Shown one piece after another: positions 3,098 to 36,490 of a stretch of DNA of 64,000 nucleotides. Below the pieces are notes generated by a model. It saw only the letters and a list, made by a program, of their open reading frames with translations, did not search any database and was not told where the DNA came from. The position numbers were made by a program, and so were the translations under genes. Numbering within the stretch: the stretch's first letter is position 1; the number at the start of each line of letters is the position of its first letter. The DNA is from Octopus sinensis (Eukaryota), in the NCBI RefSeq assembly GCF_006345805.1, contig NC_043009.1, positions 55,924,001-55,988,000 on the forward strand, read 5' to 3'.

Positions 3098-3350
3098 CGA
3101 TATCAGTAACCACGCCAGTAGCAGTAATTGTTTCAGGTTTCTGTTTAAATATGAAGTTTGCAAGCCATATTAAGTATACACCAATATCTATGAGACCGCT
3201 CCTGTGCAAGGAAGCCTCTGGCACAGCACCATTTGAAAGCATTATTTTATAAAACATAGTCGCATCTAAGTGGCGTATTTTTCCTATGGTTCCAGAGTCA
3301 ATTATTTCTCTAATGGCTTTGTAAACTGGGAAGAATTTGGTCCACATACC
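3098..3350 (-). CDS. DHDH: DHDH-like copy A, coding exon 4 (GMWTKFFPVY...SGLIDIGVY...KPETITATGVVTDI). Exons 5-7 are not found in the window.
   Basis: TTTCAG acceptor, G|GTAAGT donor, 253 bp. Lies inside ORF 3048..3374. Matches AIWTRFFP...GALLDIGIY...QKPEKIS. Confidence 0.92.
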
Positions 3351-3404
3351 CTGAAAGAAAAACATTTGTGACAAAAAGAAAAAAAAAAGATAAATAATAC
3401 TGAT

Positions 3405-3613
3405 TTCAAGATTTGGTACAAGGCCAGCAATTTCGGGGTAGGAGATAAGTCGATTACATCGATCCCAGTACTCAACTGGAACTTATGTTATTGGCCCCGG
3501 AACGATGAAAGGCAAAGTCGACCTCGGCAGAATTTGAACTTAGAACGTAAGGTCGGACGAAATGCTGCGAGGCATTTCGACCGGCGTGCTTCCGATTCTG
3601 CCAGCTCGCTGCC
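3405..3613 (-). mobile_element. SINE family 1
   Basis: Reverse complement of the family 1 consensus. Confidence 0.85.
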
Positions 3614-4076
3614 TTATAACAAAGAAATAATATCAAAACAGGAAATAAAATTGAGAAGAGATGGGAATGAAATAGTTATAAAAAGTTAAGAAGAACGACA
3701 TTATAAGTATATATTTTAGTCACTTTCCTTTAGGTTATTCTGTGTCATGATTTTCAATATTTTACCATTATCTTCCGTACCTTTGTATCTATTAAATCCA
3801 CTGTACAAACTTTCTTTCACTTATCAATGTTTTTTCTAATAAAATACTAAATATATTAATCTAATTCAGCTCATAGCACGAAGAGTAATTTCATTAGTCC
3901 CTTTATTTATTACTTAAGATCCAATTCAGAGTATCACAACTCTACTAAGTCTGAACAGTGATCCTTTAAATATATTTTGTTTTCATTGTTTACATACTCA
4001 TTCTTATTCTCTACTGCTATCCTTTCTGCACCGATATTTGTAAAATACTAAGGACAATCTTAGCCCCGCTGCGTAA

Positions 4077-4296
4077 GGCGGCGAGTTGGCAGAATCGTTA
4101 GCACGCCGGATAAAATATTTAATGGCTTTTAACCATCCTTTACGTTCTGAGTTCAAATTTCGCCGAGGTCAACTTTACCTTTCATCTTTCGGGATCGATA
4201 AATTAAGCACGAAGTACCAGTCAAACCCTGGGGTTCGATGTAATCGACTAGCCCCATACTCCAAAGTTTCAAACCTTGTGCATATTGTAGAAAAGA
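4077..4296 (+). mobile_element. SINE family 1
   Basis: Family 1 head and body. Confidence 0.85.
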
Positions 4297-4975
4297 ATAT
4301 TATCCACTCTGTGTAGTTATCTTTCATATCACTTTCCACTCAATGTCCAACTCTCTCTATAAACAAATGTTAGAACATACATCTCATTTTCTTCTTTGGT
4401 GTAGAGCTCAGCTCCAAACATCAGAATTTATTTCGCCACTCAATATGACGATATACCAACATACCAAATAAAGAGCCTTTATGTAAAGGGTTCTCAACCC
4501 CCCAAAAATGCATTTTAGAGTTCCAAGGGAAGAAGGTGAATTGGGACAGATATTGGCTTCACATGTTGGCACAAGGCCAGTAATATCGTGGAGGGGGTCA
4601 AGTCAATTACATCGACCCCAGTACTCAACTGGTACTTATTTTATCGACCCCAAAAGGATGAAAGATAATTTCATCTGAATTCTGAATTTGAATTCAGAAC
4701 GTAAGAAATGCTACTTCGCATGTTGCGCTAATTATTGTACCAATTCGCCTTGGACTAATATTCAGTAAAGAATAGTATCCTATAGATAACCTATCTTTTT
4801 AAGAAACAGAAATAACATCTGATGAGGAAATCTTGATAACAACATCTCTGAAAAAAAAAGCCAGATTTTTCCCGGCGGGACAGATTTTGACCAAGGATCA
4901 TCTTGATTAGTGATGATGTAGAGTTAAAGAACATTAGACGACCAAAATACTTTATTTCAATATTAAAAGTCATAC

Positions 4976-5139
4976 CTCCATGAAAAATAATTTCTTTGAC
5001 TTTGCGAGTTCAATCATTTCTTCTGTCTGCTGAGTGTTATTAGCACAAGTTTGCTCACACAGAACAGGTTTGCCATTGTTAAGCATGAGAATGGAAAGAG
5101 GATGATGGTAAAAATTGATTGCTGAAACGTACACCAGAT
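4976..5139 (-). CDS. DHDH: DHDH-like copy A, coding exon 3 (DLVYVSAINFYHHPLSILMLNNGKPVLCEQTCANNTQQTEEMIELAKSKKLFFME)
   Basis: CACAG acceptor, GAG|GTATG donor, 164 bp, phase 1/0. Homologous to the GKAVLCEKP...LFLME region of DHDH. Confidence 0.92.
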
Positions 5140-5462
5140 CTGTGAGAGAGATGGAATAAAAAGAATATCTTTTAGCTAAATGATTTATTTATCTAATTCA
5201 AATCTAATAAACAGTGGTAGCTGCTTCATTTGTTGACCAGGTCTGCACTGTGGATGCATATATGCATGTCTTTGCTTGCAGAGCTCTGCAGAAACAGAGT
5301 CACTTTGTTATCACGAAATCGTGAGTTCTATCTTACTGCACAACACCTTGGGCGGGTTGGTAAAAGTTTTATGAGTGAAATTTGTGGATGAAAACTGTAT
5401 GGAAGCCTGACATGTATATAGTGTGTGTATATGTGAATGAGTGTGTTTGTGTGTGTGTTCGT

Positions 5463-5517
<55 letters not shown>

Positions 5518-5732
5518 GGAGAAAGAGTGGGAAAGAGTAATAGAGAGAGTGTATATGTGTTTACCTTCTTCGTTTTACAAGAAAATCATTGAAACTAAGA
5601 CGTTAATGTTTGTTGACATTCCTTCTCAATAAAATCATTCGCAAGTCTAGTACTTTCATCTTTGTTTAAAAGGAAAATATTAGTTAGAAAGTAAACAAAA
5701 TAAAATACAAAATTTATTATCAGATTTAGTAC

Positions 5733-5844
5733 CTATGTTGGGATCTTTAGCAAATTCTTCGTAGCTGTCATACACATTCGGTATCTTAAACTTCTCTGCA
5801 AATTTCTTAGCCTTCTCTAAAGATTTGGATACCACCGCAGTTAT
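5733..5844 (-). CDS. DHDH: DHDH-like copy A, coding exon 2 (ITAVVSKSLEKAKKFAEKFKIPNVYDSYEEFAKDPNI)
   Basis: TTCAG acceptor, G|GTACT donor, 112 bp, phase 0/1. Matches DHDH [25 protein letters not shown]. Too short for the ORF track. Confidence 0.92.
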
Positions 5845-6199
5845 CTGAATAAAAACAGTAAAATAATTGTAATGTAAAACTGTTTTTTGAGGGGTGCAGG
5901 AATCAATGGATTGTCGTTAATGTATAGAAATAAGGATTTATAAATCTACTGATATAATATTATTAATAACAGTTGAAAACTTTGGCACAAGGCCAGTAAT
6001 TTTAGCGAGGGTGTGGATAGGTTTGTTATGTCGACCCCAGTGCGCAAGTTATGATAATGATGATGATGATGATGATGATGATGATGGTGGTGATAATCAT
6101 TATTATTATTATTATTATTATTTCGATTTTTTGCCACAAGGGCAGCTTAGGGGAGGTGAGGGTGAGTCGATTACATCAATCACCAATGTTCAAGTGGTA

Positions 6200-7680
6200 C
6201 AGTGATCCCTCGCTACTTCGTGGTTCAACTATCGCGGATTCCCTACATCACGGATTTTTAAAATATATATATATATCTGAACACTTAAAATTTTTCATTA
6301 AATCCATTAAAATATTAATAATAAATATTATTTCCTAGTCTAGGAACAACAAAACAAGAGTAAAATAGCAAAAAAGCATATACAGGTGTATTTGAAATTA
6401 AGACAGCCTGTGATTGATGCAATGGAGAGATACGACGACTCACAGCTTTCTGTTTTGTAATCTGGCCTGGGATTGGTGCTTTGACCGATGCTCAGATCCG
6501 CAGCATCTTCCCTTGTCTCTCTCTCTCGCGACCATTTCGCTTCAAGCTTTTATCCTGCAAGTCAAGGTGTATCTATTAGAGAAGGGCTTGCCATTCGAAA
6601 TTCTCCTTATGGATAACGCTGGTGGCCACGCTACTGATCTGTCGCATGAGGGCATTCAGATTGAGTTCCTACCGCCCAACACTACGTAACTTATTTAACC
6701 AATGGACCAGGTAGTTATCAGGGTATTCAAGGCCCTATACACGAGGAATGTCTTGGCGAACCTGGTTGCTTCTGTGGATACCGCCCAAGAAGACGAAGAC
6801 GGAAATTTTAACTTGAAGGCATACTAAAGGCAGTATACAATTGCTACGTGCCTCCAGAATATCCAGAAGGCATGGGAAGAAATGAAGCCTGCGACCATTA
6901 ACGCGTGCTGGAAAAATTTGTGGCCCGAGTTTATTTACGACGACAAGGGATTTACACTTGCCGAAATCCAACACTCCACAGTACAGAAAGCTTTGCAGTT
7001 GGTTGCGATCATTGGAGGTGACGGCTTTGCAGACATGACCACTGGAGACATCGATACGTTATTAGACTGCCACTCCCAGCTGCTAACCGACACAGACCTC
7101 GAAGACTAGATGAAGTCGGCCAGCGAAGAAGAAGAAGAAGAAGAAGTTGTCGACCAAACTGGCTTGACTTTGGAACGGCTATCAACCTGGCTAAAGAATT
7201 GAAAGAGAGGACGACGATATGGTTCGTTCTGTGCAATTTTACAACAAAGTCGACGAAGTCAAGAATCCCTACAATATGCTCTTTGAACGGAAAAAGAAGC
7301 AGCGGCAGCAACTTCCTATCACAATGTTTTTGCAGCCTCACAAAAAAAAAGAGCCAGTTCCTGCTGCTACTACAACGGTTGCACCTTCGGAAGAAGTGGA
7401 AGAGGTGTCCCAGGAAAGGGCACCGCCGTTAGCCTCATCAACATCATTTCTACTTCGCAGCAAATTCATCACCATCATCATTCAAATTTTACTTCAACTT
7501 CTTTCGTGTTGAGTACAGTAACAATCTTTATTTTTTTAAATCTAAAGTGTTATTGCTTAACAGTTGCCCTTGTTATTAATAGACTACTGTAATGGGCGGG
7601 TTGTTAACAGTACAGGGAGGGTTTTAAAAGTCCAAATATGCGTTAAATAAATACTGTAAATATGGTTCCCGACTTCAAAC
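6200..7680 (+). mobile_element. Degenerate Tigger/pogo-type DNA transposon (DDE_1), internally deleted
   Basis: TA|CAGTGATCCCTCG terminus. Encodes LLMDNAGGH and FLPPNTT*LI*PMDQ, with many stops. Confidence 0.85.
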
Positions 7681-8211
7681 TTTCAACCTTATGTTTTGTG
7701 GTAATAAACACGAAAAATTACCGTTAAATAACCTTTATATTAGAAACTAATGCTTCTCATTTCAATTGCGCAGATATTACATAATTCTAGATACGAAAGA
7801 GAAGTCGTTCGAAGTCCCATAACTTCACGAGAAAGAAAAGAAAGAAGGGTAGATTCTTTTTGCTTCATCTATTTTTTAAAGCATTCGTCTTTTCATTCAA
7901 AAGAAATTACAATTTCGAAAAAAAAAACAAAGAACAAAAACCGAATGCCAAATCTTTTACAAGTTTGATCTTCTCCATTTGTGTTCTTTTCTGTTCAAAA
8001 TACATTATGTCTGAGGGGGTGGTAAAACAAAGCAAAACGGCAGGGTCACTGCGAGAAAGCGTTTCGTCTAAAGTCTGCTCTACCAGGCTAAATAACAGCG
8101 GTTGAAGTTTGTTGTGAATAGAATGAAATTGTAAGCGAAAGGTATCAAGTGAAAAGTACCAAGAAGCTTAAATAAATAAATTAAAAAGAAAATGGAAAAA
8201 TCATTGCTTAC

Positions 8212-8295
8212 TGTGTGTTCTGAAGGATTCAAACATTGCAAAGCATTGCAGAAGTCGTTTGCAATCAAACCTGGCGAACATATTCCCCAGCGCAT
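8212..8295 (-). CDS. DHDH: DHDH-like copy A, coding exon 1 (MRWGICSPGLIANDFCNALQCLNPSEHT)
   Basis: ATG at 8295 and phase-0 donor GTAAGC at 8211. The peptide matches the DHDH N-terminal Rossmann strand (LRWGIVSVGLISSDF...SEH). Same 84-bp length as copy B exon 1. Confidence 0.9.
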
Positions 8296-14322: not shown

Positions 14323-14738
14323 GGCCTACAAACGCAATATAGTCAGTTGAGAAACATTTTCAAGAGAGTTAGTAAACAAAACTGATCTGTAGGGGTTGTG
14401 GTTATGGCGGCGTTGGGTAAGGGTTAAAATTAAATAAATATATAAATAAAAAGAGGGTAATATTTTGATTTAAAGATTGATATTAGTGAAGTGAAGAAAG
14501 AGTGAAAGAGAGAGGGAGGGAAGGAGAAACAGAAGCAGGGAGATAGGGAGAGGACATGAGAGAGAGAGAGATTAGCGAGAAAGAGTTACAGAATGGAGGG
14601 GACAGAATGAACAGAATCTTGGGAAAGGGTTGTAGAATGGACTATCAACATGTTTTTGTCCCATTTCTCCTGTTCAACTAAACCTTCCAGACTTCGTTGT
14701 CACCGGAGTGACTAACTCGTTGGGTCGTCACCGACTGT

Positions 14739-15050
14739 GACTGATTTTTGTTTGGGGTGTGCTTGCTTTTATAACTATCTAGAAGGATAGATATATCATT
14801 GAGAACAATAGATTTTGTTGGTGGCCTTGTTATCTGTATTCTAACTTTTGGTGACGTAGAAGAGGTTAGAAAGGGTCAAGTGGTGAAGACATTATTTCGG
14901 CCTAGCTAAAGGCATCTGGAAAATGTAAAACTGCTATCACAGAAGAAACATTGTTCCACCATGGGAGAAGTTCTGTTGCAGCGTTAATTTAAATTTGGCT
15001 ATGGTGGATCGAATCCACTTCATGCTTGCAAGATCCACTACATATGTTTT
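14739..15050 (-). promoter_or_regulatory. Putative core and proximal promoter of DHDH copy A (TATA at 14773-14766, Inr TCAGTC at 14744-14739)
   Basis: TATAAAAG lies 31 nt upstream of the Inr A (14742). The block is ~92% identical to 30343-30650 and sits upstream of exon 1 on the gene strand. The TSS assignment is inference. Confidence 0.6.
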
Positions 15051-15116
15051 CCACATATTTTCAACTCATAATTTTGCCACGTGGTGTATACTGAATCTAC
15101 AGTATTTTTGCCCCTT

Positions 15117-15195
<79 letters not shown>

Positions 15196-15419
15196 AAGAT
15201 TATATATACACATACACATACACATATACATGCACACATACATACACATACACATATACATATACATATACATACACAGGCAGACACATAGATAGATATA
15301 TACATACATACATACATACATACATACATACATACATACATACATAGAGAGATACATAGACAGCCAGCCAGCCAGACAGACAGACAGACAGACAGACAAA
15401 TAAATGGAGTTAAACACCG

Positions 15420-16130
15420 GTGTTATTCAAATTCTTTTACTTCCGAAATATGTTTCGAAGACTACTCTGGTATTATTCCAGAGGGAATAAAATGGTGTAA
15501 AACAATCTTCTCATCAGGGAAAGAAAGAAACCAAGCACATCAATAAGACATTTTAACGGAATGTGATAACTGCGTATATGATGAAGGAAACGCCATCGAG
15601 TTCTTTTAAAAAACCGTTAGTAGATATAACGTCAAAGGTAGTTTATAGAAAGTGGAGGAGAAAGAAATTAGCAGAAAAATAATAGTAGAGAGATATAGAG
15701 CGATAGGTGAATTTGAAAATAAAGCTCAAAGGCATGGAAGTAGATATATTTAGTGAAAGGGAAATGTAAGAAGACAGTTAAAGGTCAAGTTTTATAGAAT
15801 GGTAGAAATCACTTATTGGAACTAAAATTATGTTTCTGCCAAAATTTGCAACGATAAACGCGTTCTATAAACGTGATTTCAAGGGGATTCTTTTAGAATA
15901 GGATAAAAAACATTTCAGTATTACAAAGCGAACAAAAAGATTTACCTTTGTCATACGGTAAAGAAATAGAGAGAATATTCCATTCCAAATCAAATTGTTT
16001 ATGATCTTTTAGATCCCATATTAATTCAATAAACCCAACATTGTTACGTTTATTGATATGCCTAAATGTTGAGTAATGATTAGATATTCTTTTGGACAAC
16101 TGAGATGAAGAACTACCTATTTAAAAAAAG
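15420..16130 (-). mobile_element. Penelope-like element 3' part: GIY-YIG endonuclease remnant plus hammerhead-bearing terminal region
   Basis: Encodes (*)IGSSSSQLSKRISNH...LIWDLKD...WNIL...CSLCNTE (ORF 15893..16099). A hammerhead motif lies downstream on the same strand. Confidence 0.8.
15440..15522 (-). ncRNA. Type I hammerhead ribozyme motif, one stem III mismatch
   Basis: Reads UUUCC-CUGAUGA-GAAGAUU...AGUCUUC-GAAAC-AUAU-UUC-GGAAG. Stem I is 5 bp and stem II is 7 bp. Position 16.2 is U instead of G. Confidence 0.75.
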
Positions 16131-16427
16131 ACGTCAAACACGGAAGTAATTTTACATTGATAATGTAAGGCTTTCTTAACACAAAACATCTTTCACAAAA
16201 CATCTTTCACAAATCATCTCTTCACATAATAATAAGTTGTTAAATACAAATCCACTTAATGAAAATATTAACTATAATTTTGTTAACACTAGCCATTCTT
16301 AAAATAATAACAACAGCGGGGTTATTGCTTCTGAAGTTGAATCCTATCGTATACGTTTTCTTCGCAGTAATTCTAAGACAAGACACTGTTTATCGATGTA
16401 AAATTACTTCTGGGTCTATAAACACTG

Positions 16428-16497
<70 letters not shown>

Positions 16498-16793
16498 GTG
16501 TATGTGTGTATGTATGTGTGCATGTATACCTGATTACACATAAGCATGAATACTTATACATGTATGTATGTATAATTGATTATATATATGTATGTATACT
16601 TAGTCATATATATATATATATGTATGTATTCTTGGTTGTATGTATGTATGTATGTTTGCATGCATGTATGGATGGATGGACGTATATATGTGTGAGGGGG
16701 TGTAATATCAAAATTATCAATTTTAGTAAGGAAATATTTCATTTTCTTTCAACCCTCTTCTCCTTCTCTCTGTCTCTCTTCCTCTTCTCTTTT

Positions 16794-16909
16794 TTACAAA
16801 GGGGTTGTCTTTATCTGATGAGTTTCTTCAAGTTGTCGTCGAACCTCATCAATAACTTTTATAATTGACAAAGTATCAGAATGAGTGTGAGCAGGACATT
16901 CTAATTGAC
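16794..16909 (-). CDS. DHDH: DHDH-like copy B, last coding exon 7 (GQLECPAHTHSDTLSIIKVIDEVRRQLEETHQIKTTPL*)
   Basis: TTAAAG acceptor and TAA stop. Matches G.KESP...ES..LADILEEVRKAIG. The spliced CDS is 333 aa with all phases consistent. Confidence 0.88.
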
Positions 16910-17184
16910 CTTTAAAAGCAGAAGAGAGAAATGTAAAAAGAGAATTCTCGGAGTATAAACATTTTGACACAAAAAAGAAAAAGAGAGTAAAATATTTCAA
17001 TTATGCAATGAGAACACATTGAATAAAATATTGATGAATTTTACTTTGTTCGCAAAGTATTACTCCAAGCAATAGAAGTGGTAGATAATCAAATTATGAG
17101 CCACAGTATTAGTAGTAGCTTCAACAGTTATCGAAATATATGGAAGCACGCTTATATAAGCGACAGTATTTATCAAAGACTTAC

Positions 17185-17335
17185 CTTTCTCAAAACACTG
17201 GCGAACAGCTTCAGCCTCATAAGCTAATCCAGCGCTATTGGGGTAATAATACTTAGCATCAGATTTGGGGAGTGGAAATTCTCTTTCTTCTCCATTCACC
17301 TCGATTTTGGTGGGAGACCAAAATGGTCCGGGTAT
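17185..17335 (-). CDS. DHDH: DHDH-like copy B, coding exon 6 (IPGPFWSPTKIEVNGEEREFPLPKSDAKYYYPNSAGLAYEAEAVRQCFEK)
   Basis: AACAG acceptor, G|GTAAGT donor, 151 bp. Matches [21 protein letters not shown]...NGAGMSYEAKHVWECLRKG. Confidence 0.93.
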
Positions 17336-17594
17336 CTGTTGACATAGGAGTGTATGGTATATACGTTAAGACAGTTTGGTTTAATTTCTTGACTATTAAC
17401 GTTATATATGTTGGAGTTTGTACAATAATTTCATTCATAAAGAAATTAAATAAATACTTATAATTCTTCTCTAAATGTTCTTTTTTATCTGGGAAATCTA
17501 AATAATAGTCATAATAATAAAACTTCAATTGTCGGTTAACTAACTACAAGTATAATTTTAAAATTATTTATTTTTAAATGAAATGATTACTTAC

Positions 17595-17719
17595 ATAAAT
17601 TTTACCTTTACTTCCATAAATATATACGTCTCGTCTTCCTTCTATATCAAGATTATAAAACAAAGATGCTCTAGCACCATCCTTATAAGTCAGAATAATA
17701 TTGGCAGATTGATCGACAC
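17595..17719 (-). CDS. DHDH: DHDH-like copy B, coding exon 5 (GVDQSANIILTYKDGARASLFYNLDIEGRRDVYIYGSKGKIY)
   Basis: GAAAG acceptor, TAT|GTAAGT donor, 125 bp, phase 1/0. Matches GVDDTVTVLLQYPG...GTKG. Confidence 0.9.
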
Positions 17720-18222
17720 CTTTCCAAAATGAAACAAAAACACATTTCTTAGTTTTCCTTTTTACTCGGGTTGGTAAACAGTTTTTATTAATACAAGTTT
17801 ATCTGTGTTGAAAAAAATAATGAGTCTTTAAACTAAATTATTTTTATCCTAAAGCTTTATTTGCATAGGTTTCAGTCTTAATTGTGAGCGGTTTTAAATT
17901 CTCGCTCCTATCTTACAACATCTAACCGGCACTCTAATGTTCTCTGTTTGCTTTACTTTCATTAGCGAATATTTTCGTTCTGTAGTAACTTCCTTTTCTC
18001 TTCACTTATTCTAAGCGCTTTGGAAGCAAAAATATGCTTTAAATTATTCATGACATAAAAGGGCGCATGCTCCTCTTTACTAATTACCGTATGTAGATGT
18101 ATATCATTCCCTCCCCCTCTCTCGCATGACTCTTTTTTTCTATTACGTTATAGCTCACAAAATTATTGAAACCTCCATGGAGGCACTTAAGCAACACAAA
18201 ACTTTATTAAAGATATACTCAC

Positions 18223-18472
18223 CTGTATCAGCAATCGTTCCAACGGCAGTAATTGTCTTCGGTTCCTCTCTAAATATGAATCTTGAAAGCCATATTTGAT
18301 ACACAGAAGAACACAAGAGGCCTCCTCCACCCAAAGAATGCTGAGATACAATGTCTAATGAAAAGGTATCAAAAAAGAAAGCTGCATCCATGTGGCGTAT
18401 CTGTCCTATGGTTCCAGAGTCAATTATTTCTCTTAGAGCTTTATAAGCTGGGGAGAAGTTGGACCACAAAGC
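18223..18472 (-). CDS. DHDH: DHDH-like copy B, coding exon 4 (ALWSNFSPAYKALREIIDSGTIG...GGGGLLCSSVY...EEPKTITAVGTIADT)
   Basis: CCTTAG acceptor, G|GTGAG donor, 250 bp. Lies inside ORF 18155..18469. Confidence 0.92.
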
Positions 18473-19230
18473 CTAAGGAGAAAGCATTTATGTTGAAAAA
18501 AAGAAAGAATGTTTAAAGTGAGGAATAAGAATGAAAGAAAGGAACTTATGTATAAAAAGATACAAGCGAATGTTGAAAGAAATATTATAAAAGACCAGCT
18601 TATTTCTGTTATTTTTCATCATGTTATTCTGTGTTGCGATCTTTAATATTATACCACTACGTTCCTCACCTCTGTTTCTATCAAATCCGCTGTACGGCCT
18701 TTCAAAACACTTGCCAAGTTTCACAGATAAGGCACATTACTAAACGTATAATTCTATTTTACCTCTTGTTATAAATCTATTATAAATTTATAATTTCAAA
18801 TCCAATTAAGACCAATACGCCTAATACGGGAAACTACTTTTATTGCCTTCTTTTCTTACATTCTTTTTTTTGTCTTGTTTTTATTTTGTCTTCTGACATT
18901 TAATGTTCTTCTATCGTCAATGCAACGATATTTTATTAAGTCCTTAGTACAACCTTCTACTATCACCATTTCTTTACCAACCAGTTACATCTACAAAAAA
19001 TTTTAGAATATTCTTTAAATTTATTCTTCAATGAAGGTATTATTTCAAGTGTTCCACTTTACTTCATCGCCCGATGTTATCATATGCTAACGTCGTAGTT
19101 TTCTATGATAGGGGTTCTAACCTGGGTTAGAAAGAAAGGGAAATTGCGACGAATATTCAATAAATTATGATGACATTAGATTATGTATACATTGTAGCTT
19201 GCAGCTTGTTTATTATTTAATCTATTGAAA

Positions 19231-20025
19231 GGCGGCGAGCTGGCAGAATCGTTAGCACGCCGGGCGAAATGCGTAGCCGTATTTCGTCTGCATTACGTTC
19301 TGAGTTCAAATTCCTCCGAGGTCGACTATGCCTTTCATCCTTTCGGAGTCGATAAATTAAATACCTATTTCTTTATTACCCACAAGGGGCTAAACATAGA
19401 GGGGACAGACAAGGACAGACATAGGTATTAAGTCGATTACAACGACCCCAGTGCGGAACAGGTACTTAATTTATCGACCCCGAAAGGATGAAAGGCAAAG
19501 TCAACCTCGGCGGAATTTGAACTCAGAACGTAACGACAGACGAAATACCGCTAAGCATTTCATCCGGCGTGCTAACGTTTCTGCCAGCTCGCCGCCTTCA
19601 AAAAATTAAATTAAATACCAGTTACGCACTGGGGTCGATATAATCGACTTAATCCGTTTGTCTGTCCTTGTTTGTCCTCTCTGTGTTTAACCCCTTGTGG
19701 ATAGTAAAGAAATAGGTATTTCGTCTGCCGCTACGTTCTGAGTTCAAATTCCGCTGAGGTCGACTTTGCCTTTTATCCTTTCGGGGTCGATTAAATAAGT
19801 ACCAGTTACGTTTGTCTGTCCTTGTTTGTCCTTTCTGTGTTTAGTCCATTGTGGGTAGTAAAGAAATAGGTTTTTCGTCTTTCTTACGTTCAAATTCTGC
19901 TGAGGTCGATTTTGCCCTTCATCCTTTCGGGGTCTATAAATTAAGTACTAGTTGCGTAGTGGGATCAATCTAATCGACTAGCCCCTACTCCAGAATTTCG
20001 GGCCTTGTGCTTAGAATAGAAACGA
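19231..20025. mobile_element. Nested cluster of family 1 SINEs: a + copy interrupted by a - copy (~19367-19598), followed by 5'-truncated tandem copies
   Basis: The duplication AAATTAAATACC flanks the inverted insertion. Three consecutive body/tail units lie at 19610-20025. Confidence 0.85.
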
Positions 20026-20279
20026 TTATTTAATCTATTATATTCAATATATCTCATCAATAGGAAATCTATAGAAATAATCTAAGAAGTGAACACATCG
20101 CAATACTAACACGTGGCAAGACACAATATTGACTTGTAAACATTTAATGTACTTGGTAGTATAATATAGTTGCCAAAGGAAATACTTTCCTTGTCAGCAA
20201 TTAATATATATGTACTAGTTGCCAGGAATATATTTAATATGTAAATTCTCCCACCCAGTTGCGTTACACCGTTAAACGT

Positions 20280-20625
20280 CTGAGACCCCTTTCGGTCACG
20301 ACACAGACCATGGGATTGCACCTAGAAAGTTAGGTACTCCCAGGCACAAGCCCGGGCAAGGTTGTTTATGGAAGACCACCAGTCGCCCATGCATACCAGC
20401 CTCCCCTCTCCACGCCACCAGTATTATCCAAGGGAAAGGCAAAGGCCGATACAGCTTGGCACCTGTGACATCGCAACTCATTTCTACAGCTGAGTGAACT
20501 GGAGCAACGTGAAATAAAGTGTCTTGCTCAAGACAAGAGCACAACACACAGCCCGGTTCAGGATTCGAGCTCACAACCTCACGATCGTAAGCTCGACACT
20601 CTAACCACTGAGCCATGCGCCTTCC
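20280..20625 (-). mobile_element. tRNA-derived SINE, family 4 (CORE/V-like CTTGAGCAAGACACTT block)
   Basis: A and B boxes, with a 14-bp TSD ACACCGTTAAACGT at 20266-20279 and 20626-20639. Confidence 0.85.
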
Positions 20626-20929
20626 ACACCGTTAAACGTAATGGGTATTTAAGTTATGTGTTCGTGGATAGTGGATGTGGTACTGATGAAAACGCAATAA
20701 TTCCTGCAATTTGCATATACGCTTATCACCTATTTCTTCGATCGCTCCGTTGTAGTACTGGCTCTGAATTCTATAGGAAATCTACGAGTGTAGAGAACAA
20801 CTTAAAAGATTTTATTGAATATCTCTGATTACACATAACAATAAATATTTGTTTTCAATTAGTAAATATTCCTTTTATAATTATTTTTTTTTTATTTTTC
20901 TTTCATTCAAAGATTTAGATTTTTGAGCC

Positions 20930-21420
20930 GATCATGTGCGTTAAAAATTATCCATATACCTAACGTGGATTTATGTCATCTCTAAAGTGGTAGGAAAGAC
21001 ATAATATGTTATTTATGGAAAAGTTGTATCAACTAATTAGATGAAAACTAGAAATTTAAAGCAACATGTGAAGAACGACCATCCTAAACATCAGGACAAA
21101 ATATGTTTCGAATGTCATGTGAATACTTTAAAAAATGTGAAGCTGGATTCAAAAGAGCCATTCTAAGAGATGAACCAAAAGCTTTTAGAAAGTTTCTGTC
21201 ATAACATAAAAGAGGCAAGATAAAATACAAACTGCATACAAATAGGGGAAAATATAATTAAGTTTTTTTTTTTTTTTTCAAAATGGAATTTGTGTTTGGA
21301 AATGTCAGAAAGAACAATATAATGTATTGCTTTCAGTTGTGTCAACATATCTTTGTGGAGAAGATTTCCAAACCAGTTGCAAATGAAAATGAAGTAAACG
21401 GGAGGTTAAAATTGAATGCA
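20930..21420 (+). mobile_element. Degraded hAT (Charlie/ZBED-like) transposase fragment
   Basis: Encodes LKQHVKNDHPKHQDK...LKNVKLD...NQKLLES...IGENII, the pattern of the Charlie N-terminus. Confidence 0.55.
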
Positions 21421-21466
21421 TTGTTACCTTTTAAGCATTTCACCATATAGCCATGAAACGACAAAG

Positions 21467-22297
21467 GGATCTTTTCCTTTTGAACGGCAGTTTTTAACAT
21501 AATTTCTAGGTAACTAAAAAGTTTTAAACTTCGTATACTGGTAGAATGTGTTTATAAAACATCATTTTCTCTTGGCTTTATTGAGAAAATTCTATAGGTT
21601 GTAACATATTTCGTCTTTAATTTCTTGCATTTCGGCAATTTTAACCAATCACTGATGTCCATTTAGGTAAACAACGTTCTGTGCCGCATGAATATGTCCC
21701 TCCTTTAAGAAACAGATTGGGTTTATTTACATTTGTGAAGAAAAAAGATACCCTTCCCCCACCCCTAACCCTAACCCTAACTAAACCTAACTCTAACCCT
21801 AAATCTAAAATAGATTGAAATGCAATAGATCGATACTAGAGTTATAATTATGGTGACAATTTCATACGACACCGCTATAAAATCTTAGCGGTGTCGTATG
21901 AAATTTTCACCCATAATTATAACCCTAGTATCGATCTATTGCATTTCAATCTATTTTAGATTTAGGGTTAGAGTTAGATTTAGTTAGGGTTAGGGTTAGG
22001 GGTGGGGGAAGGGTATCTTTTTTCTTCACAAATGTAAATAAACCCAATCTGTTTCTTAAACGAGGGACATATTCATTATGCACAGAATGTTATTTACGTC
22101 AATGGAGGTAATTGATTGGTTAAAATTGCCGAAATGCAAGAAATTTTAGACGAAATATGTTACAACCTATAGAATTTTCTCAATAAAGCCAAGAGAAAAT
22201 GATGTTTTATAAACACATTCTACCAGTATACGAAGTTTAAAACTTTTTAGTTACCTAGAAATTATGTTACAAACTGCCGTTCAAAAGGAAAAGTTCC
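21467..22297. mobile_element. 831-bp foldback (arm-only) non-autonomous TIR element, Merlin-like termini, with internal (CCCTAA)n
   Basis: Arms of ~411 bp with an 8-nt spacer (21878-21885). Termini GGATC...GTTCC. Exact 8-bp TSD CGACAAAG at 21459-21466 and 22298-22305. The superfamily is inferred from the GG termini and 8-bp TSD. Confidence 0.85.
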
Positions 22298-22707
22298 CGA
22301 CAAAGAAACAAGCACAGCTTTCTTATTGGCTAGAATCTATCTTAGAAAAATCATTTATAATGTCCTAGAATACTTTGGAATACTTGTTAATTTGTAGTTA
22401 AAAGTAGTGAGTGGAATTTTGAAATAGAGTGAAAAAAATCACGAGGGGAAATAGTTGAGAACCATCCTTTTACATTGTTCCTCAGCCTGCTAGAAAGGGA
22501 AACTAAATCGTGCAAGATAACACCTCAGTACCTTAAGATAGGTAAGATATACCAGATAATGTTGTATCAGATAAAACCATCTCTGAGGGGGAAAAGAGAT
22601 GATCAAGACCAGAATGTTTTAGATTATGGATCCCCTTTATTAGGGCTGATGTGTATTCAAGAACAGCAACGTGCCAAAATGCACAATTTTAGAGTTAAAA
22701 GACATAC

Positions 22708-22871
22708 CTCCATGAAAAATAATTTCTTTGATTTTGCAAGTTCAATCATTTCTTCTGTCTGCTTCGTATTACAAGCACAGGGTTTCTCACATAGAACTGG
22801 TTTACCATTATTCAGCATAAGAATAGAAAGAGGATGATGGAAAATGTTGGCCGTTGAAAGGTACACAAGAT
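22708..22871 (-). CDS. DHDH: DHDH-like copy B, coding exon 3 (DLVYLSTANIFHHPLSILMLNNGKPVLCEKPCACNTKQTEEMIELAKSKKLFFME)
   Basis: CATAG acceptor, GAG|GTATG donor, 164 bp. Contains the canonical CEKP motif of Gfo/Idh/MocA enzymes. Confidence 0.94.
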
Positions 22872-22997
22872 CTATGAGTAAAACGAAATTATATTAGTTT
22901 TCTTTGCTATCAAAGTAATGCATTTGTGTAATTCAAGTGTGATATATAGAAATAATTGTTTAATATTTACACTTGTCTATCTTGCGTGTGCGTGTAT

Positions 22998-23866
22998 AAG
23001 ATGGGGTGCCGAAAATTTGTTGGATTTGGGTAAAAATAAAAAATACAGGAGAATCAGTTAATTATGATTTTATTCAACACTAGCAGTATCGCCCGGCGTT
23101 GCTCGGGTTTGTAAGGGAAATAACTATATAAGCATTTTTAGAGAGTTATAGCAAAAAATAGCAAAAAAATAGCAAAAAAATGCATTAAAAATGAAATAAA
23201 AAATGATGGTAATTTTTTTTAAATCGTTGACTCATCGTAGACATTTTTAGAGAGTTACTTCCCTTATATAATAGCGAAAAAATGCATTAAAATGGAAAAA
23301 ATGATGGTAAATTTTTTTTTTAATCGTAGACTCATGTAGACGCTTTCTTAGCCATTTCTGTTTTGGTGTCTTCAAGCCATGAAGTCGTTGTTCTAAAAGA
23401 ACGCTGGTCTCCTTGACAACGCATTACGACGTTGATTTCCTTACACTCCCTTCCCCACAGGTGCAGGTGTGAGCGTGGACGCCAACTCCGCCGCCATCGA
23501 CACACGAAAAATTATGCATTAAAATGGAATAAAAATGATGTTAAATTATTTTTAAAATCGTTAACTCATCGTAGACGCGCGCTAATAGCCAGACGGGCTC
23601 GATATGAATCACGACTATAAGATACCCGAATTTGGTTAAACTGCACCGCAAAATGTGGGAGTAGTTAGGAATCTAAATCGAAGGGGACAGACACTCACAC
23701 AACTACAGTTTTATATATATAGATATCCTTCTCTCAAATTCACACACGTATTGCAGCAGACCGTCAGTTTTTATAAGTTCTGTAAAAGAAATCGGAAGGT
23801 TGGGCCTCCAACCAAGCCATTCATGACACCCTTAAAACTAGAAACTTTTCAGCACCGCTTCGTATG
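22998..23866. mobile_element. Mariner-derived non-autonomous element split by a Helitron
   Basis: Degenerate TIRs GGGGTGCCGAAAATT and AAACTTTTCAGCACCGCTTCGTA. Confidence 0.5.
23080..23723 (-). mobile_element. Non-autonomous Helitron
   Basis: A|TCTATATATA 5' end, CCCGAGCAACGCCGGG hairpin plus CTAG|T 3' end, no TSD. Confidence 0.85.
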
Positions 23867-24285
23867 TGTGCATATATTTTAAGTGAACAATTAATTTCTT
23901 TAACTTTACGCGAATAGTTGTCATATCTATTCATATTCTATTATCGTTAGAATCATTATTGTTCACGATGATAATGCTTTTTATCGTCTTATTGAAATTT
24001 CATGTTTATTTCTCTTATTTGGAAGGAGGTGAACACAGCTATCCGGATTCTTTTTGATCCAGTGTCATCTCGTTCATGTGTTACAACATGAACGAGTTGA
24101 ACTTATCACGAACTATACATTTCTTGGTCTATTTTTTGTCGTACAGTACAAGACATTATAGTAACAGTTGTTAAAATTGAGTTTGTTTAAGACCAAAATG
24201 AAATGAAATAAATTAAAAGACCTACAATGTTTACAAAATAACATACAAAATTTACAATTGGATTTAGGCTAAATATTTTTCATAC

Positions 24286-24397
24286 CTATGTTGGGATCTT
24301 TGGCAAATTCTTCATAGCTGGTATACACATTTGGTATTTTAAATTCATCGGATAGTTTCTTAGCTTTCTCTAAAGATTTGGATACCACTGCAGTTAT
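24286..24397 (-). CDS. DHDH: DHDH-like copy B, coding exon 2 (ITAVVSKSLEKAKKLSDEFKIPNVYTSYEEFAKDPNI)
   Basis: TTTAG acceptor, G|GTATG donor, 112 bp. 32/37 aa identical to copy A exon 2. Confidence 0.93.
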
Positions 24398-26228
24398 CTA
24401 AATGAAAAGCAAAATAATGTCATGTGCAACTGAGTTTTATTGTGCAGTATATGTAATTGCAATGTTGATAGTTATATAATTTTAATGTTTGATGAATGCA
24501 AATAAATAAGGCTTTCTTAATCGACTGTTACTAACTTCTTAGACATGAGGCAGGCGATTTTGAGATGAGGGTGGTAGTTGATTACATCGATCTTTACACT
24601 TTATTGGTTGTGTAATTTATCGACTACAAAAAGGATGAAATGCTAATTAGTCCTCAGCAAGATTTAAACTCAGAACCGAAACAGCCGGAAGCAGTACCGC
24701 TAGGTATATCTGTGACGTTCTAATGATTCCGCCAATTCATTTTTCTTAGAAATAATTGTCTCTGACATAGCCAAAAGGTTTGAAATTTGGTGGAACAAAA
24801 ATAATGGAATATATCAATCCCGCCCAGTACTACTTAACTGGTACTATATGTTGCAGAACCCGGGGATGAACGTCAAATTTGACCTTGTCATGATTTGAAC
24901 TTAGAATATAAAGAGCACAAACTAAATACTGACACTCTTGGGAATCTTCAAATCAGTCGTCATCCTCACTATTATTATTATTAGGGCGACGAAGTGGTAG
25001 AATCGTTAGAGCCCCGTGGTATTTCTTCCGACTCCTTGCGTTCTGAGTTCAAATTCCGTGTTTCACTTTTTTAGGGATGATGAAATCAAGTACCAGTCAA
25101 GTACTGGAGCAGATGGTACAGGCTAAGCCTCCACCTGTCAATATTACTTGACTTGTGCCTAAATCAGAAACCATGGTAGTGAAAATCCTTCGCGGTATTT
25201 CTTCTTGATATTTACATCCTAAGTTTAATTCCAAATGCCAGTCATCTTTTAGGGGTCGACAAGATAAAATAAGTGTCAAGTACTGACTTGCCTTCTCCCA
25301 TAACAATTGTTGGCCTTGTGCCTATATTTGAAGCCTCAACTATTATTAGTATTACCATTATAATAATATTATTCTGCTTCTGGCTGTCTTTATTCGTATT
25401 ACGCTTAGGTCATCAAGAGAATTTGTAACTCGAATGTAGAAATATATAAATATAGTAAAAAGAGAGGAAGGGGACAAAGAAACGGGAATCAGTGAAAAAA
25501 TAGAAAGAGGAAACACGAAAGAGAGACAGTGGGGTGAGATAGAAAGTCTATATCACTACAGACAGTGATAGGTAGGTAGGTAGGTAGGTAGGTAGGTAGA
25601 TAGATTTGCAACAATACAAGTTCAAACGCTCAGTTTTGTCTTTTTCTTAACACCATTGTACCTAATGTGTTAACGAAAATAGGAAATAAAATTACGAAAA
25701 GATAAATGTATGTTTTAAAGACCGTCTTTTATAGTATGAATTATTCTTTGTTACACTCGGACCTTTCTATGTATATTATTATTTCTTTTTCGTGTTATGT
25801 TGTCTTCTAAAACTTGAACTATATTTGTGGTGATCCAATTTTTGAATTCCTTGCGTTATCTTCTGTTATTGACGTATTCCTAAAGATTTAAAGTTTACCA
25901 TAAATGTTTGTTTATTGTTCAGCAGTTATACTTTTTAAAATATCCTCTTTCAAAACGAAAGTTTAGCCGCTATTTCATAAAGTTAAACGTTTTAAACATT
26001 GGACGATACGCTGAATGTTTTCCTAAATACTTTTTAAAATCCTTCTATCCATGTCTAACCCGTCCATTTCTGGCATTATAGAGTTTAGTGCTCTATATAG
26101 AATACTTTTCGTCATAGGTTTGCCCCGGTTAAAGTTTGTAGTGGTAAATAATAAAGAAATTGTGAGAAATTTAAGAAGTTAAAAATGAATAAAATAAAGA
26201 GAGACAAACGTGAAATGTTATTACTTAC

Positions 26229-26312
26229 TTTGTGTTCTGAAGGATTCAGACATTGCAAAGCATTGCAGAAATCCGTTGCAATCATACCTGCCGAACAGAG
26301 TCCCCAGCACAT
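26229..26312 (-). CDS. DHDH: DHDH-like copy B, coding exon 1 (MCWGLCSAGMIATDFCNALQCLNPSEHK)
   Basis: ATG at 26312, donor GTAAGT at 26228, 84 bp. Paralogous to 8212-8295. Confidence 0.92.
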
Positions 26313-36249: not shown

Positions 36250-36490
36250 TAACTGTCGACACTTTATTAGTGTATTTCAAAGGCGAAACAACGCGCTGGG
36301 GACTATGTTCGGCAAGTTTAATTGCAAACGATTTCTGCAATGCTTTGCACTGTTTAAAACCTTCAGAACATGAAATAAATAATGACTTTTTTCCTTTCAT
36401 ATTTACCTATCAATTTTTAATTTTATTAAGTGACGCAGTGACATTTTTAATTTCATTTCTTCTGTATTTGCAATTAAGAGCTTCAACCGC
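36250..36490 (+). pseudogene. DHDH-like remnant C: inverted exon 1 (36291-36374) with flanking sequence
   Basis: Reads TRWGLCSASLIANDFCNALHCLKPSEHE. ATG is ACG, the donor GT is AT (ATAAAT), and the Rossmann Gly is Ser. Intron-1 homology runs to CTTCAACCGCT at ~36490. No further exons were found. Confidence 0.85.

What the first reader, a model, noticed from the sequence alone, without database searches (positions are those of the whole stretch)
18299..18325. DHDH copy B has replaced the catalytic-loop aspartate (GGALLDIGIY -> GGGLLCSSVY)
Seen: TGT (Cys) at 18313-18311, where copy A has GAT (Asp, 3188-3186). WTRF is also changed to WSNF. The gene is otherwise complete and in frame (333 aa). 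Established: Asp176 and Tyr180 are conserved active-site residues of dimeric dihydrodiol dehydrogenase. Together with K->Q in copy A, neither paralogue has the full canonical set, and the losses are reciprocal. Inference: neofunctionalisation of both copies, or a regulatory heterodimer.
Basis: partly seen in the sequence, partly recalled or inferred. Interest (0 to 1): 0.7.

Follow-up and report, generated by a model that had tools for sequence, protein, structure and literature searches.

The report
Octopus DHDH paralogue with Asp-to-Cys change
The Asp-to-Cys change is real, but it marks a whole conserved, octopus-specific subfamily of duplicated dihydrodiol-dehydrogenase genes sitting in a large tandem gene family, not half of a reciprocal two-gene loss, so it is a moderately interesting enzyme-family variant rather than a surprise.

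Summary
Copy B is an intact 7-exon, 333-aa gene on the minus strand (26312..16794). TGT (Cys174) sits at 18313-18311, exactly where monkey DHDH has Asp176, and Lys97, His79 and Tyr180 are kept. The window is Octopus sinensis chromosome CM016871.1, and the gene is already a RefSeq model (XP_036364279.1).

- Octopus genomes carry at least 8 DHDH paralogues in tandem arrays, including copies with the full Lys/Asp/Tyr triad.
- Cys defines a clade (B1+B2, 99% bootstrap) found in O. sinensis, O. vulgaris and O. bimaculoides.
- That clade is under purifying selection (dN/dS about 0.21). Its B1 orthologues are as conserved (95%) as the other paralogue types.
- The B clade also lost Gly178 and Arg163.
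- Across DHDH-like proteins, Arg163 and Asp176 are lost together in about 18% of representative clusters, while Lys97 and Tyr180 stay 96-98% conserved.

Most likely copy B is still an NADP(H)-dependent oxidoreductase with a remodelled nicotinamide and substrate pocket. A GFOD1-like pseudoenzyme is the main rival. The young B2 copies are turning over: one sister copy has a stop codon and another has Cys->Gly.

The parts
16794..26312 (-). Copy B (subtype B2b): complete DHDH-like gene, 333 aa. Exons are 26312-26229, 24397-24286, 22871-22708, 18472-18223, 17719-17595, 17335-17185 and 16909-16794 (the last includes the stop).
   Evidence: Gene model with GT-AG introns. It is 100% identical to RefSeq XP_036364279.1/XP_036364280.1 (P0123). 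Pfam PF01408 and PF22725 match. The AF2 model has pLDDT 96.7, and Foldseek gives TM 0.93 to 2o48.
18223..18472 (-). Exon 4 of copy B. It encodes the pocket/lid segment and the GGGGLLCSSVY motif, and it is the fastest-evolving exon.
   Evidence: Between B2 and ObB1, exon 4 dN is 0.13-0.15 against 0.03 in exons 1-3, at equal dS. Among B2 paralogues exon 4 dN/dS is 0.7-1.9 against 0.2-0.37 for the rest; this difference is not significant (p = 0.13).
18311..18313 (-). TGT codon for Cys174, at the position of Asp176 ('site 3' of Gfo/Idh/MocA enzymes).
   Evidence: GAT->TGT needs two base changes. The codon is TGT in all Cys-bearing B copies examined.
18350..18352 (-). ATT codon for Ile161, at the position of Arg163 ('site 4', 13 residues before site 3). 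It is lost in all B-type copies. Coordinates were derived by counting 13 codons upstream of Cys174 within exon 4.
   Evidence: Alignments. The definitions of sites 3 and 4 come from PMC11612644.
22775..22795 (-). CEKPCAC segment of exon 3 (approximate coordinates). Lys95 (= Lys97) is kept. The extra Cys99 (= position 101) is found in B types only. CCC (Pro) is unique to this copy; other octopod paralogues have Thr or Ala.
3098..8295 (-). Copy A, exons 1-4 only (8295-8212, 5844-5733, 5139-4976, 3350-3098). It has CEQT (Lys97->Gln) and RSGLIDIGVY (Asp kept). Exons 5-7 lie beyond the window start.
   Evidence: The four exons are identical to UniProt A0A6P7T245 / LOC115218668 (337 aa), as printed in the supplement of PMC10142993.
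30677..30742 (-). Relic of the first ~22 codons of an exon 4 (MLFFQALYSNFFPANKALREIF, then a stop).
   Evidence: A similar relic lies upstream of B2a in L003.
36291..36377 (+). Dead exon-1 relic of a DHDH copy on the opposite strand. ATG has become ACG and the GT donor has become AT. No further exons follow in the window.

Best explanation
Shown:
- Copy B is an intact, already annotated gene of Octopus sinensis (XP_036364279.1).
- It belongs to an Octopus-specific 'Cys-type' subfamily (B1 and B2) of dimeric dihydrodiol dehydrogenase (DHDH) paralogues.
- The subfamily arose by tandem duplication after the split from Argonauta and before the split of O. bimaculoides from O. sinensis/vulgaris.
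- In its ancestor, the cofactor-side pair Arg163/Asp176 was replaced by Ile/Phe/Tyr plus Cys, Gly178 was lost, and an extra Cys was gained at position 101.
- The catalytic Lys97 and Tyr180, His79, the NADP fingerprint and the whole fold were kept.
- The subfamily is maintained by purifying selection, strongest on the Rossmann domain.

Inferred:
- The protein still binds NADP(H) and still uses the Lys-Tyr pair to oxidise or reduce carbonyl/diol substrates.
- Its nicotinamide pocket and substrate lid (exon 4) are remodelled, which changes specificity, kinetics or pH dependence. It would therefore be one specialised member of a diversified detoxification/carbonyl-reductase gene family.
- It is not one half of a reciprocal A/B pair.
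- The B2 copies, including this one, are young and in birth-and-death turnover.
For: Identity and intactness: (window 6794-36312 equals CM016871.1:55,930,794-55,960,312).

Family size and residue states.

Clade structure: B1+B2 99% bootstrap, all Octopus paralogues 99%, Octopoda 100%.

Selection:
- dN/dS is 0.21-0.23 between B2 copies and O. bimaculoides B1, at dS about 0.4.
- Exons 1-3 (Rossmann domain) give 0.07.
- B1 orthologues are 95.2% identical between O. sinensis and O. bimaculoides. That compares with 95.9 (E1), 94.8 (E2), 86.6 (D) and 90.0 (A).

Residue conservation within the B clade:
- Lys97, His79, Tyr180, Trp125 and Trp254 are invariant in all B copies.
- Cys is kept while its two neighbours vary (SS, ST, AS, TA, CS).

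Asp176 is the least conserved of the active-site residues:
- It is present in 103/121 close homologues and in 110/142 representatives.
- Lys97 and Tyr180 are kept in 96-99%.
- Loss of Asp176 is tightly coupled to loss of Arg163: 109 have both, 7 only Arg, 1 only Asp, 25 neither (p = 2e-20).
- This coupled loss is therefore a recurrent, tolerated state of the family.

Fold: AF2 pLDDT 96.7 including the motif region. Foldseek gives TM 0.93 and rmsd 1.4 A to DHDH 2o48.
Against: - There is no activity, cofactor-binding or expression data for any B-type protein.
- In related Gfo/Idh/MocA enzymes, mutating the equivalent Asp is reported to cut activity strongly (from my memory of the AFR and inositol dehydrogenase work; not retrieved here).
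- The published family pseudoenzyme GFOD1 also keeps sites 1-2 and has lost sites 3-5 (PMC11612644).
- For this particular copy the terminal-branch count is 8 non-synonymous to 5 synonymous changes, which cannot exclude relaxed constraint.
- No O. vulgaris orthologue of B2b was identified.
- Sister copies B2d and B2c carry a stop codon and a Cys->Gly change.
Confidence: 0.5

Rival explanations
1. Non-catalytic pseudoenzyme. Loss of the two cofactor-contacting residues (sites 3 and 4) abolishes or cripples hydride transfer. The protein is retained for ligand or NADPH binding, for scaffolding, or as a modulating partner in dimers with active paralogues.
For: - Human GFOD1, of the same superfamily, keeps sites 1-2, lacks sites 3-5, binds no NAD(P) and acts through a protein partner (PMC11612644).
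- B types lack sites 3 and 4 and also Gly178, which is 96-97% conserved elsewhere.
- The clade is conserved (dN/dS about 0.2), so it has some function.
Against: - Site 5 and the dinucleotide fingerprint are unchanged.
- The Rossmann domain is the most constrained part (dN/dS 0.07).
- Lys97, His79 and Tyr180 are invariant across all B copies. Full retention of the remaining catalytic residues is less expected in a dead enzyme.
- About one fifth of DHDH-like clusters across life share the Arg/Asp-less state, which suggests a working enzyme subtype.
Confidence: 0.28
2. This particular copy (B2b) is a redundant, very young duplicate drifting towards pseudogenisation. The Cys is simply inherited from the B ancestor and has no role of its own in this copy.
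For: - Sister copy B2d has CGA->TGA at codon 233, and B2c has TGT->GGT at the Cys.
- B2 paralogues show dN/dS of 0.3-0.6.
- The B2b terminal branch has 8 non-synonymous to 5 synonymous changes.
- No clear O. vulgaris orthologue was found.
- Exon relics surround the gene.
Against: - The ORF is intact and all six introns keep GT-AG.
- The non-exon-4 part still has dN/dS of 0.2-0.37.
- This copy uniquely regained Pro in the EKP motif.
- RefSeq models it as coding.
Confidence: 0.15
3. A and B have lost complementary catalytic residues (Lys97 in A, Asp176 in B) and work together as an obligate or regulatory heterodimer because no canonical copy remains.
For: - Within the window, the two genes are adjacent on the same strand and each lacks one residue.
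- The B2 -> A order recurs in the duplicated units of O. sinensis and in O. bimaculoides.
- Copy A protein is detectable in ink.
Against: - A Lys/Asp/Tyr copy and Glu-type copies exist in the same genome and the same array.
- A and B are old paralogues (dS about 0.5), each with its own orthologues.
- B types outnumber A types.
- In DHDH, as I recall the structure, each active site comes from one chain, so no complementation in trans is expected.
- Nothing was or could be tested on dimerisation.
Confidence: 0.05
4. The Cys codon is a sequencing or assembly artefact.
For: None.
Against: The same TGT is found in independent assemblies of three species and in several paralogues.
Confidence: 0.01

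Closest known systems
Mammalian dimeric dihydrodiol dehydrogenase (DHDH; monkey structure PDB 2o48/2poq/3ohs). It is also a D-xylose dehydrogenase and a 1,5-anhydro-D-fructose reductase.
   Same: - Best sequence match among solved structures: E 4e-65, aligned end to end.
- The predicted fold superposes with TM 0.93 and rmsd 1.4 A.
- The domain pair PF01408 + PF22725 is the same.
- Lys97, His79, Tyr180, Trp125 and Trp254 are kept.
- Length and architecture are the same.
   Different: - Asp176->Cys, Arg163->Ile, Gly178->Ser and Leu177->Ser.
- Extra cysteines at positions 99 and 101 next to Lys97.
- Arg37/Asp38 -> Lys/Ser; this last change is shared by all octopod copies.
- Only about 35% identity.
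- It is one of at least 8 paralogues rather than a single-copy gene.
Other Octopus DHDH paralogue types: D (P0134/P0004/P0137), E1 (P0003), E2 (P0005) and A (window copy A, P0140).
   Same: Same 7-exon structure, same chromosome arrays, 71-77% identity, and a common origin after the Argonauta split.
   Different: - D types keep Asp176.
- E types have Glu.
- A types keep Asp but have Lys97->Gln.
- Only B types have Cys176, a non-Gly residue at 178 and Cys101.
Human GFOD1, a Gfo/Idh/MocA pseudoenzyme (PMC11612644).
   Same: The same superfamily and fold. Sites 1-2 (Lys/Arg and Tyr) are kept, while the Asp of site 3 and the Arg of site 4 are replaced by small or uncharged residues.
   Different: - GFOD1 also lacks site 5 and other cofactor contacts, and it was shown not to bind NAD(P).
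- Copy B keeps site 5 and the fingerprint, and its Rossmann domain is strongly constrained.
- The two are only distantly related, and cofactor binding by copy B is untested.
Uncharacterised Arg163/Asp176-less DHDH-like proteins, for example Enterococcus faecalis oxidoreductase PDB 3e9m.
   Same: 3e9m is the second-best solved relative (E 2e-38). By the HMMER alignment it has Trp at site 4 and Gly at site 3 while keeping Lys and Tyr. It belongs to the roughly 18% of representative clusters that lack both residues.
   Different: It is bacterial and has Gly rather than Cys. As far as I know it is a structural-genomics entry with no assigned function.

Membership tests
Gfo/Idh/MocA oxidoreductase superfamily | N-terminal NAD(P)-binding Rossmann domain (PF01408) | tested here: met
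   E 5.9e-22, 79 bits against a cutoff of 24, residues 4-119.
Gfo/Idh/MocA oxidoreductase superfamily | C-terminal alpha/beta domain (PF22725 / PF02894) | tested here: met
   PF22725 matches at E 4.4e-20, 72 bits against a cutoff of 27. PF02894 scores 20.9 bits, just below its cutoff of 22.9.
Gfo/Idh/MocA oxidoreductase superfamily | EKP motif with the site-1 Lys | tested here: met
   The motif reads CEKPCAC, and Lys95 aligns with Lys97.
Gfo/Idh/MocA oxidoreductase superfamily | Site-2 Tyr/His, four residues after site 3 | tested here: met
   Tyr178 aligns with Tyr180.
Gfo/Idh/MocA oxidoreductase superfamily | Site-3 Asp (Asp176 in DHDH), which contacts the nicotinamide side of the cofactor | tested here: not met
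   Cys174, encoded by TGT at 18313-18311. The site definition comes from PMC11612644.
Gfo/Idh/MocA oxidoreductase superfamily | Site-4 Arg (Arg163 in DHDH) | tested here: not met
   Ile161 in this copy, and Phe or Tyr in the other B copies.
Dimeric dihydrodiol dehydrogenase (DHDH) clade, membership by descent | Closest solved and annotated relatives are DHDH, and the protein groups with animal DHDH | tested here: met
   2o48 is the top hit by both sequence and fold. All top named homologues are annotated as trans-1,2-dihydrobenzene-1,2-diol dehydrogenase. The protein nests within cephalopod DHDH in the NJ tree.
DHDH as an enzyme (EC 1.3.1.20 / 1.1.1.179) | NADP(H)-dependent oxidation of trans-dihydrodiols or D-xylose, or reduction of dicarbonyls | not testable with these tools
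   This needs recombinant protein assays. The active-site signature is incomplete (sites 3 and 4), so I call the gene DHDH-derived or DHDH-like, not a demonstrated DHDH.
DHDH as an enzyme (EC 1.3.1.20 / 1.1.1.179) | Homodimer through the C-terminal sheet | not testable with these tools
   Only a single-chain model was available. Arg148 is kept. Position 202 is Thr in all octopod copies, so it is uninformative.
Gfo/Idh/MocA pseudoenzymes (GFOD1-like) | Loss of the cofactor-binding residues at sites 3-5, and no NAD(P) binding | tested here: inconclusive
   Sites 3 and 4 are lost. Site 5 (Ile11) and the SxGxxA/S fingerprint are retained. Binding itself cannot be tested here.

The most novel reading that the evidence does not exclude
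The B-type proteins could be a new catalytic or regulatory type in which the active site was rebuilt around cysteine. Cys176 sits beside the nicotinamide and the Lys97/Tyr180 pair, and Cys95, Cys99 and the B-specific Cys101 (C-x3-C-x-C) flank Lys97. Cys176 could act as a nucleophile in thiohemiacetal-type aldehyde oxidation. Alternatively, it could form a redox-switch disulfide or a metal site with the neighbouring cysteines. More broadly, the coupled loss of Arg163 and Asp176 in about one fifth of DHDH-like clusters may mark an unrecognised functional subtype of this family.
Probability: 0.08. Interest if true: 0.7.

Novelty: new variant of a known kind. Interest (0 to 1): 0.35.

Why it matters
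If the B types are active, they show that the supposedly catalytic Asp of DHDH-type Gfo/Idh/MocA enzymes is dispensable when it is lost together with Arg163. This would point to a recurrent, uncharacterised enzyme subtype found from bacteria to octopus.

If they are inactive, they would be a second animal example, after GFOD1/2, of a conserved pseudoenzyme in this superfamily.

Either way, the octopus DHDH expansion has at least 8 genes, four different residues at one active-site position, and one member present in ink. It is an undescribed case of lineage-specific diversification of a xenobiotic/carbonyl-metabolising enzyme in cephalopods. It is not a major surprise, because tandem enzyme families with altered active sites are common.

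Tried and rejected
- The homologue search with exon 4 alone (83 aa) returned nothing. The full-length protein was needed.
The DHDH review and the cloning paper are not held. The role of Asp176 therefore rests on PMC11612644 and on my memory.
- Two searches for octopus DHDH literature found nothing about this family apart from the ink proteome paper.
- I first treated the O. vulgaris locus L001 as the strict orthologue of copy B. Cluster members later showed it is the B2c paralogue lineage, so the 0.52 dN/dS for that pair is a paralogue comparison.
- The apparent excess of non-synonymous change in exon 4 among B2 copies is not significant. Fisher p is 0.13, and the binomial test against neutrality gives p = 0.45. 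I make no claim of positive selection.
- Gene conversion as the reason for exon 4's divergence was rejected, because dS is uniform across exons.
- A Biopython bootstrap timed out and was replaced by a numpy NJ bootstrap.
All residue equivalences were re-checked against the PDB alignment.

Full report
**What is in the sequence**

The window is eukaryotic. A tblastn probe located DHDH-like exons on the minus strand in two sets, and splice sites were read directly from the sequence.

Copy B has seven exons: 26312-26229, 24397-24286, 22871-22708, 18472-18223, 17719-17595, 17335-17185 and 16909-16794. All introns are GT-AG, and the ORF is 333 aa. The codon at 18313-18311 is TGT, encoding Cys174 in the motif GGGGLLCSSVY.

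Several results place copy B in the DHDH family:
- HMMER against all PDB sequences puts monkey dimeric dihydrodiol dehydrogenase (2o48) first, at E 4e-65.
- That alignment has no gap around the motif. It gives Asp176 -> Cys174, Tyr180 = Tyr178 and Lys97 = Lys95.
- Pfam finds the Gfo/Idh/MocA N- and C-terminal domains.
- An AlphaFold2 model built on a 78-sequence alignment has mean pLDDT 96.7 and pTM 0.93. It superposes on 2o48 with TM 0.93 and rmsd 1.4 A.

- Copy A reads RSGLIDIGVY. The Asp codon GAT at 3188-3186 is confirmed, but GGALLDIGIY is not copy A's sequence.
- WSNF is common to nearly all octopod paralogues.

Only exons 1-4 of copy A are in the window: 8295-8212, 5844-5733, 5139-4976 and 3350-3098.

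**Where it comes from and whether it is known**

My copy B model is 100% identical to P0123, which is RefSeq XP_036364279.1/XP_036364280.1 of Octopus sinensis. Window 6794-36312 is base-for-base the reverse complement of GCA_006345805.1 CM016871.1:55,930,794-55,960,312. The gene is therefore already annotated, automatically, as 'trans-1,2-dihydrobenzene-1,2-diol dehydrogenase'.

I found no paper that discusses the octopus DHDH family or this substitution.

**The family context changes the picture**

O. sinensis, O. vulgaris and O. bimaculoides each carry many DHDH paralogues. They fall into these types:

| Type | Motif | Proteins | Other residues |
|---|---|---|---|
| B2 (333 aa) | LLCSSVY | P0123 (this window) | Lys97 kept |
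| B2 (333 aa) | LLCSTVY | P0122, P0124 | Lys97 kept |
| B2 (333 aa) | LLCASVY | P0001 | Lys97 kept |
| B1 (329 aa) | LLCTAVY | P0002, P0126, P0127 | Lys97 kept |
| A | Asp kept | window copy A, P0140 | CEQT (Lys97->Gln) |
| D | Asp kept | P0004, P0133/134, P0137 | full Lys/Asp/Tyr triad |
| E1 | Glu | P0003 | Lys97 kept |
| E2 | Glu | P0005 | Lys97 kept |

Outside Octopus:
- The single Argonauta protein has Asp.
- A decapod transcript-derived protein has Asp.
- Two cuttlefish proteins have Tyr.

A neighbour-joining tree gives these bootstrap values:

| Clade | Bootstrap support |
|---|---|
| B1+B2 | 99% |
| B+A | 88% |
| All Octopus paralogues | 99% |
| Octopoda | 100% |

The expansion is therefore Octopus-specific, and the Asp->Cys change happened once, in the B ancestor, before O. 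bimaculoides diverged.

On the O. sinensis chromosome the order, read in the direction of transcription, is:
- B2b (this window);
- A (this window and beyond);
- B2d;
- an A-like exon 1;
- B2c;
- the D type.

B2a lies 18.6 Mb away. O. vulgaris shows A -> B2c -> D.

A Lys/Asp/Tyr copy thus lies in the same array. This removes the premise that neither paralogue is canonical and that the losses are reciprocal.

**Is the Cys type maintained?**

- Nei-Gojobori dN/dS between any B2 copy and O. bimaculoides B1 is 0.21-0.23, at dS about 0.35-0.41. The Rossmann-domain exons give 0.07.
- B1 orthologues of O. sinensis and O. bimaculoides are 95.2% identical. This matches E1 (95.9) and E2 (94.8), and is higher than D (86.6) and A (90.0).
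- Lys97, His79, Tyr180, Trp125 and Trp254 are invariant in every B copy.
- The Cys is kept while the two following residues vary.

The B clade as a whole is clearly a functional gene lineage.

The young B2 copies are less clear:
- Pairwise dN/dS among them is 0.3-0.6.
- Exon 4 gives 0.7-1.9 against 0.2-0.37 elsewhere, but the counts are small and not significant.
- B2d carries a TGA at codon 233, and B2c has TGT->GGT at the Cys.
- The B2b terminal branch has 8 non-synonymous and 5 synonymous changes.

This looks like birth-and-death turnover. The window copy itself is intact, and it uniquely has Pro restored in the EKP motif.

**What else changed, and how unusual it is**

B types share four derived states:
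- Asp176->Cys;
- residue 177 to Ser/Thr/Ala;
- Gly178 to Ser/Thr/Ala;
- a new Cys at position 101 (CEK[PT]CAC).

They also lack Arg163, which is Ile, Phe or Tyr in B types.

A published structural comparison of Gfo/Idh/MocA proteins defines five active-site positions. Sites 1-2 (Lys and Tyr/His) act in substrate binding and catalysis. Sites 3-5 (Asp, Arg and a fingerprint residue) contact the nicotinamide and pyrophosphate of the cofactor. The same work shows that the pseudoenzyme GFOD1 keeps sites 1-2 but lacks sites 3-5 and binds no NAD(P) (PMC11612644).

By position, Asp176 is site 3 and Arg163 is site 4. Copy B keeps sites 1, 2 and 5 and has lost sites 3 and 4.

Conservation across the family:

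| Residue | 120 closest homologues plus copy B | 142 representatives of 50%-identity clusters |
|---|---|---|
| Asp176 | 103/121 | 110/142 |
| Lys97 | 120/121 | 139/142 |
| Tyr180 | 120/121 | 136/142 |
| Gly178 | 117/121 | 137/142 |

Cys at position 176 is otherwise seen only once, in a protein that has also lost Lys and Tyr.

Arg163 and Asp176 are lost together:

| Set | Both | Arg only | Asp only | Neither | Fisher p |
|---|---|---|---|---|---|
| Representatives | 109 | 7 | 1 | 25 | 2e-20 |
| Close homologues | 97 | 7 | 6 | 10 | 9e-7 |

These sequences are phylogenetically related, so the p values overstate independence.

The solved but uncharacterised E. faecalis protein 3e9m is also Arg/Asp-less.

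Losing this pair while keeping Lys/His/Tyr is therefore a recurrent state of DHDH-like proteins. The octopus B type is one instance of it, and is unusual in choosing Cys and in also losing Gly178.

**How it most likely works**

- *Shown:* the fold is intact, the remaining catalytic residues are conserved, the Rossmann domain is strongly constrained, and the lineage is under purifying selection.
- *Inferred:* the protein still binds NADP(H) and uses the Lys-Tyr pair, but its nicotinamide pocket and exon-4-encoded lid are remodelled. That makes it a specialised member of a diversified carbonyl/diol oxidoreductase family. Mammalian DHDH has broad carbonyl/diol specificity and reduces 1,5-anhydrofructose.
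- *Main rival:* a GFOD1-like pseudoenzyme.
I consider the heterodimer unlikely for three reasons:
  - Other paralogues, including a canonical one, are present.
  - A and B are old (dS about 0.5 in both exons 1-3 and exon 4) and are not exclusive partners.
  - As I recall the structure, each DHDH active site is built from one chain.

**Exon 4**

Between A and B, dS is the same in exons 1-3 (0.52) and exon 4 (0.56), but dN is 0.087 against 0.357. The same pattern holds within the B clade. The pocket/lid exon is where the paralogues differ. This reflects differing constraint, not gene conversion of the other exons.

**Verdict**

- The gene is annotated, but the substitution, the subfamily and the family-wide Arg163/Asp176 coupling are, as far as I could find, undescribed.
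- This is a new variant of a known kind, of moderate interest.

Noticed in passing
window 3098-8295 (-), copy A: Copy A (Lys97->Gln) is UniProt A0A6P7T245 / LOC115218668 (337 aa). The O. vulgaris ink proteome paper lists it as an identified master protein with 3 unique peptides, 4 PSMs and 9% coverage. So the Lys-less paralogue is translated. Ink proteomes also contain many cytosolic proteins, so this says nothing about secretion (PMC10142993).
   Followed up: partly
DHDH-like proteins in general (alignments): Arg163 and Asp176 (human numbering; sites 4 and 3) are lost together. Among 142 representatives, 109 have both, 7 only Arg, 1 only Asp and 25 neither. Lys97, His79 and Tyr180 stay 96-99% conserved. 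PDB 3e9m belongs to the Arg/Asp-less class.
   Followed up: partly
L006 1357-10116 (O. sinensis CM016871.1, about 34 kb downstream of copy B): There is a further B2 copy (B2d) with all splice sites intact but CGA->TGA at codon 233. It may be a pseudogene, an error, or an uncollapsed haplotype. It is followed by another A-like exon 1, which suggests a duplicated [B2-A] unit.
   Followed up: partly
L004 15863-16112 (O. sinensis B2c, P0125): The Cys codon has become GGT (Gly) in O. sinensis, while the O. vulgaris counterpart (P0001, L001) keeps TGT. Three tandem exon-1 copies precede this gene (L004 5869, 7935, 10001).
   Followed up: no
window 22708-22871 (-), exon 3 of copy B: This copy alone has CEKP (CCC). 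All other octopod paralogues have CEKT or CEKA, so it has reverted to the canonical EKP motif.
   Followed up: no
window 36291-36377 (+): Dead DHDH exon-1 relic on the opposite strand. ATG has become ACG and the donor GT has become AT. No downstream exons occur in the remaining 27 kb.
   Followed up: yes
window 30677-30742 (-): Relic of a truncated exon 4 about 4.4 kb upstream of copy B. A similar 51-nt relic lies upstream of B2a in L003 (8011-8061), so it belongs to the duplicated unit.
   Followed up: partly
window 34311-35760 (-): Frameshifted pogo/Tigger-like transposase relic. The 335-aa ORF hits DDE_1 at E 3e-7 and weakly hits HTH_psq. A second overlapping ORF continues it in another frame.
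   Followed up: partly
window 1975-2337 (-), inside intron 4 of copy A: A 120-aa ORF with a zf-RVT match (E 2e-5, just below the Pfam cutoff). It is probably the tail of a non-LTR retrotransposon.
   Followed up: partly
L002 about 28803-32416 (O. bimaculoides) and P0140: O. bimaculoides has a second Cys-type exon 4 (LLCCSVY), inverted relative to the B2-like exons 5-6 that follow it. The RefSeq A-type model P0140 starts with 'MRLKLFASVLRK', which is an out-of-frame reading of a B2 exon 6. This points to read-through transcripts or an annotation artefact. Two further exon-4 pseudo-copies with stops lie upstream (L002 3508-3771 and 7780-8037).
   Followed up: no
P0143 (representative library): A 1316-aa protein with four DHDH-like stretches is the top hit (E 6e-236, 35% identity). 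It is probably several tandem genes fused by gene prediction, so tandem DHDH arrays may exist in another organism too.
   Followed up: no
window 14200-16600 and 28600-29600: Long runs of TA/CA-type microsatellites and low-complexity sequence flank the genes and generate spurious long ORFs.
   Followed up: no
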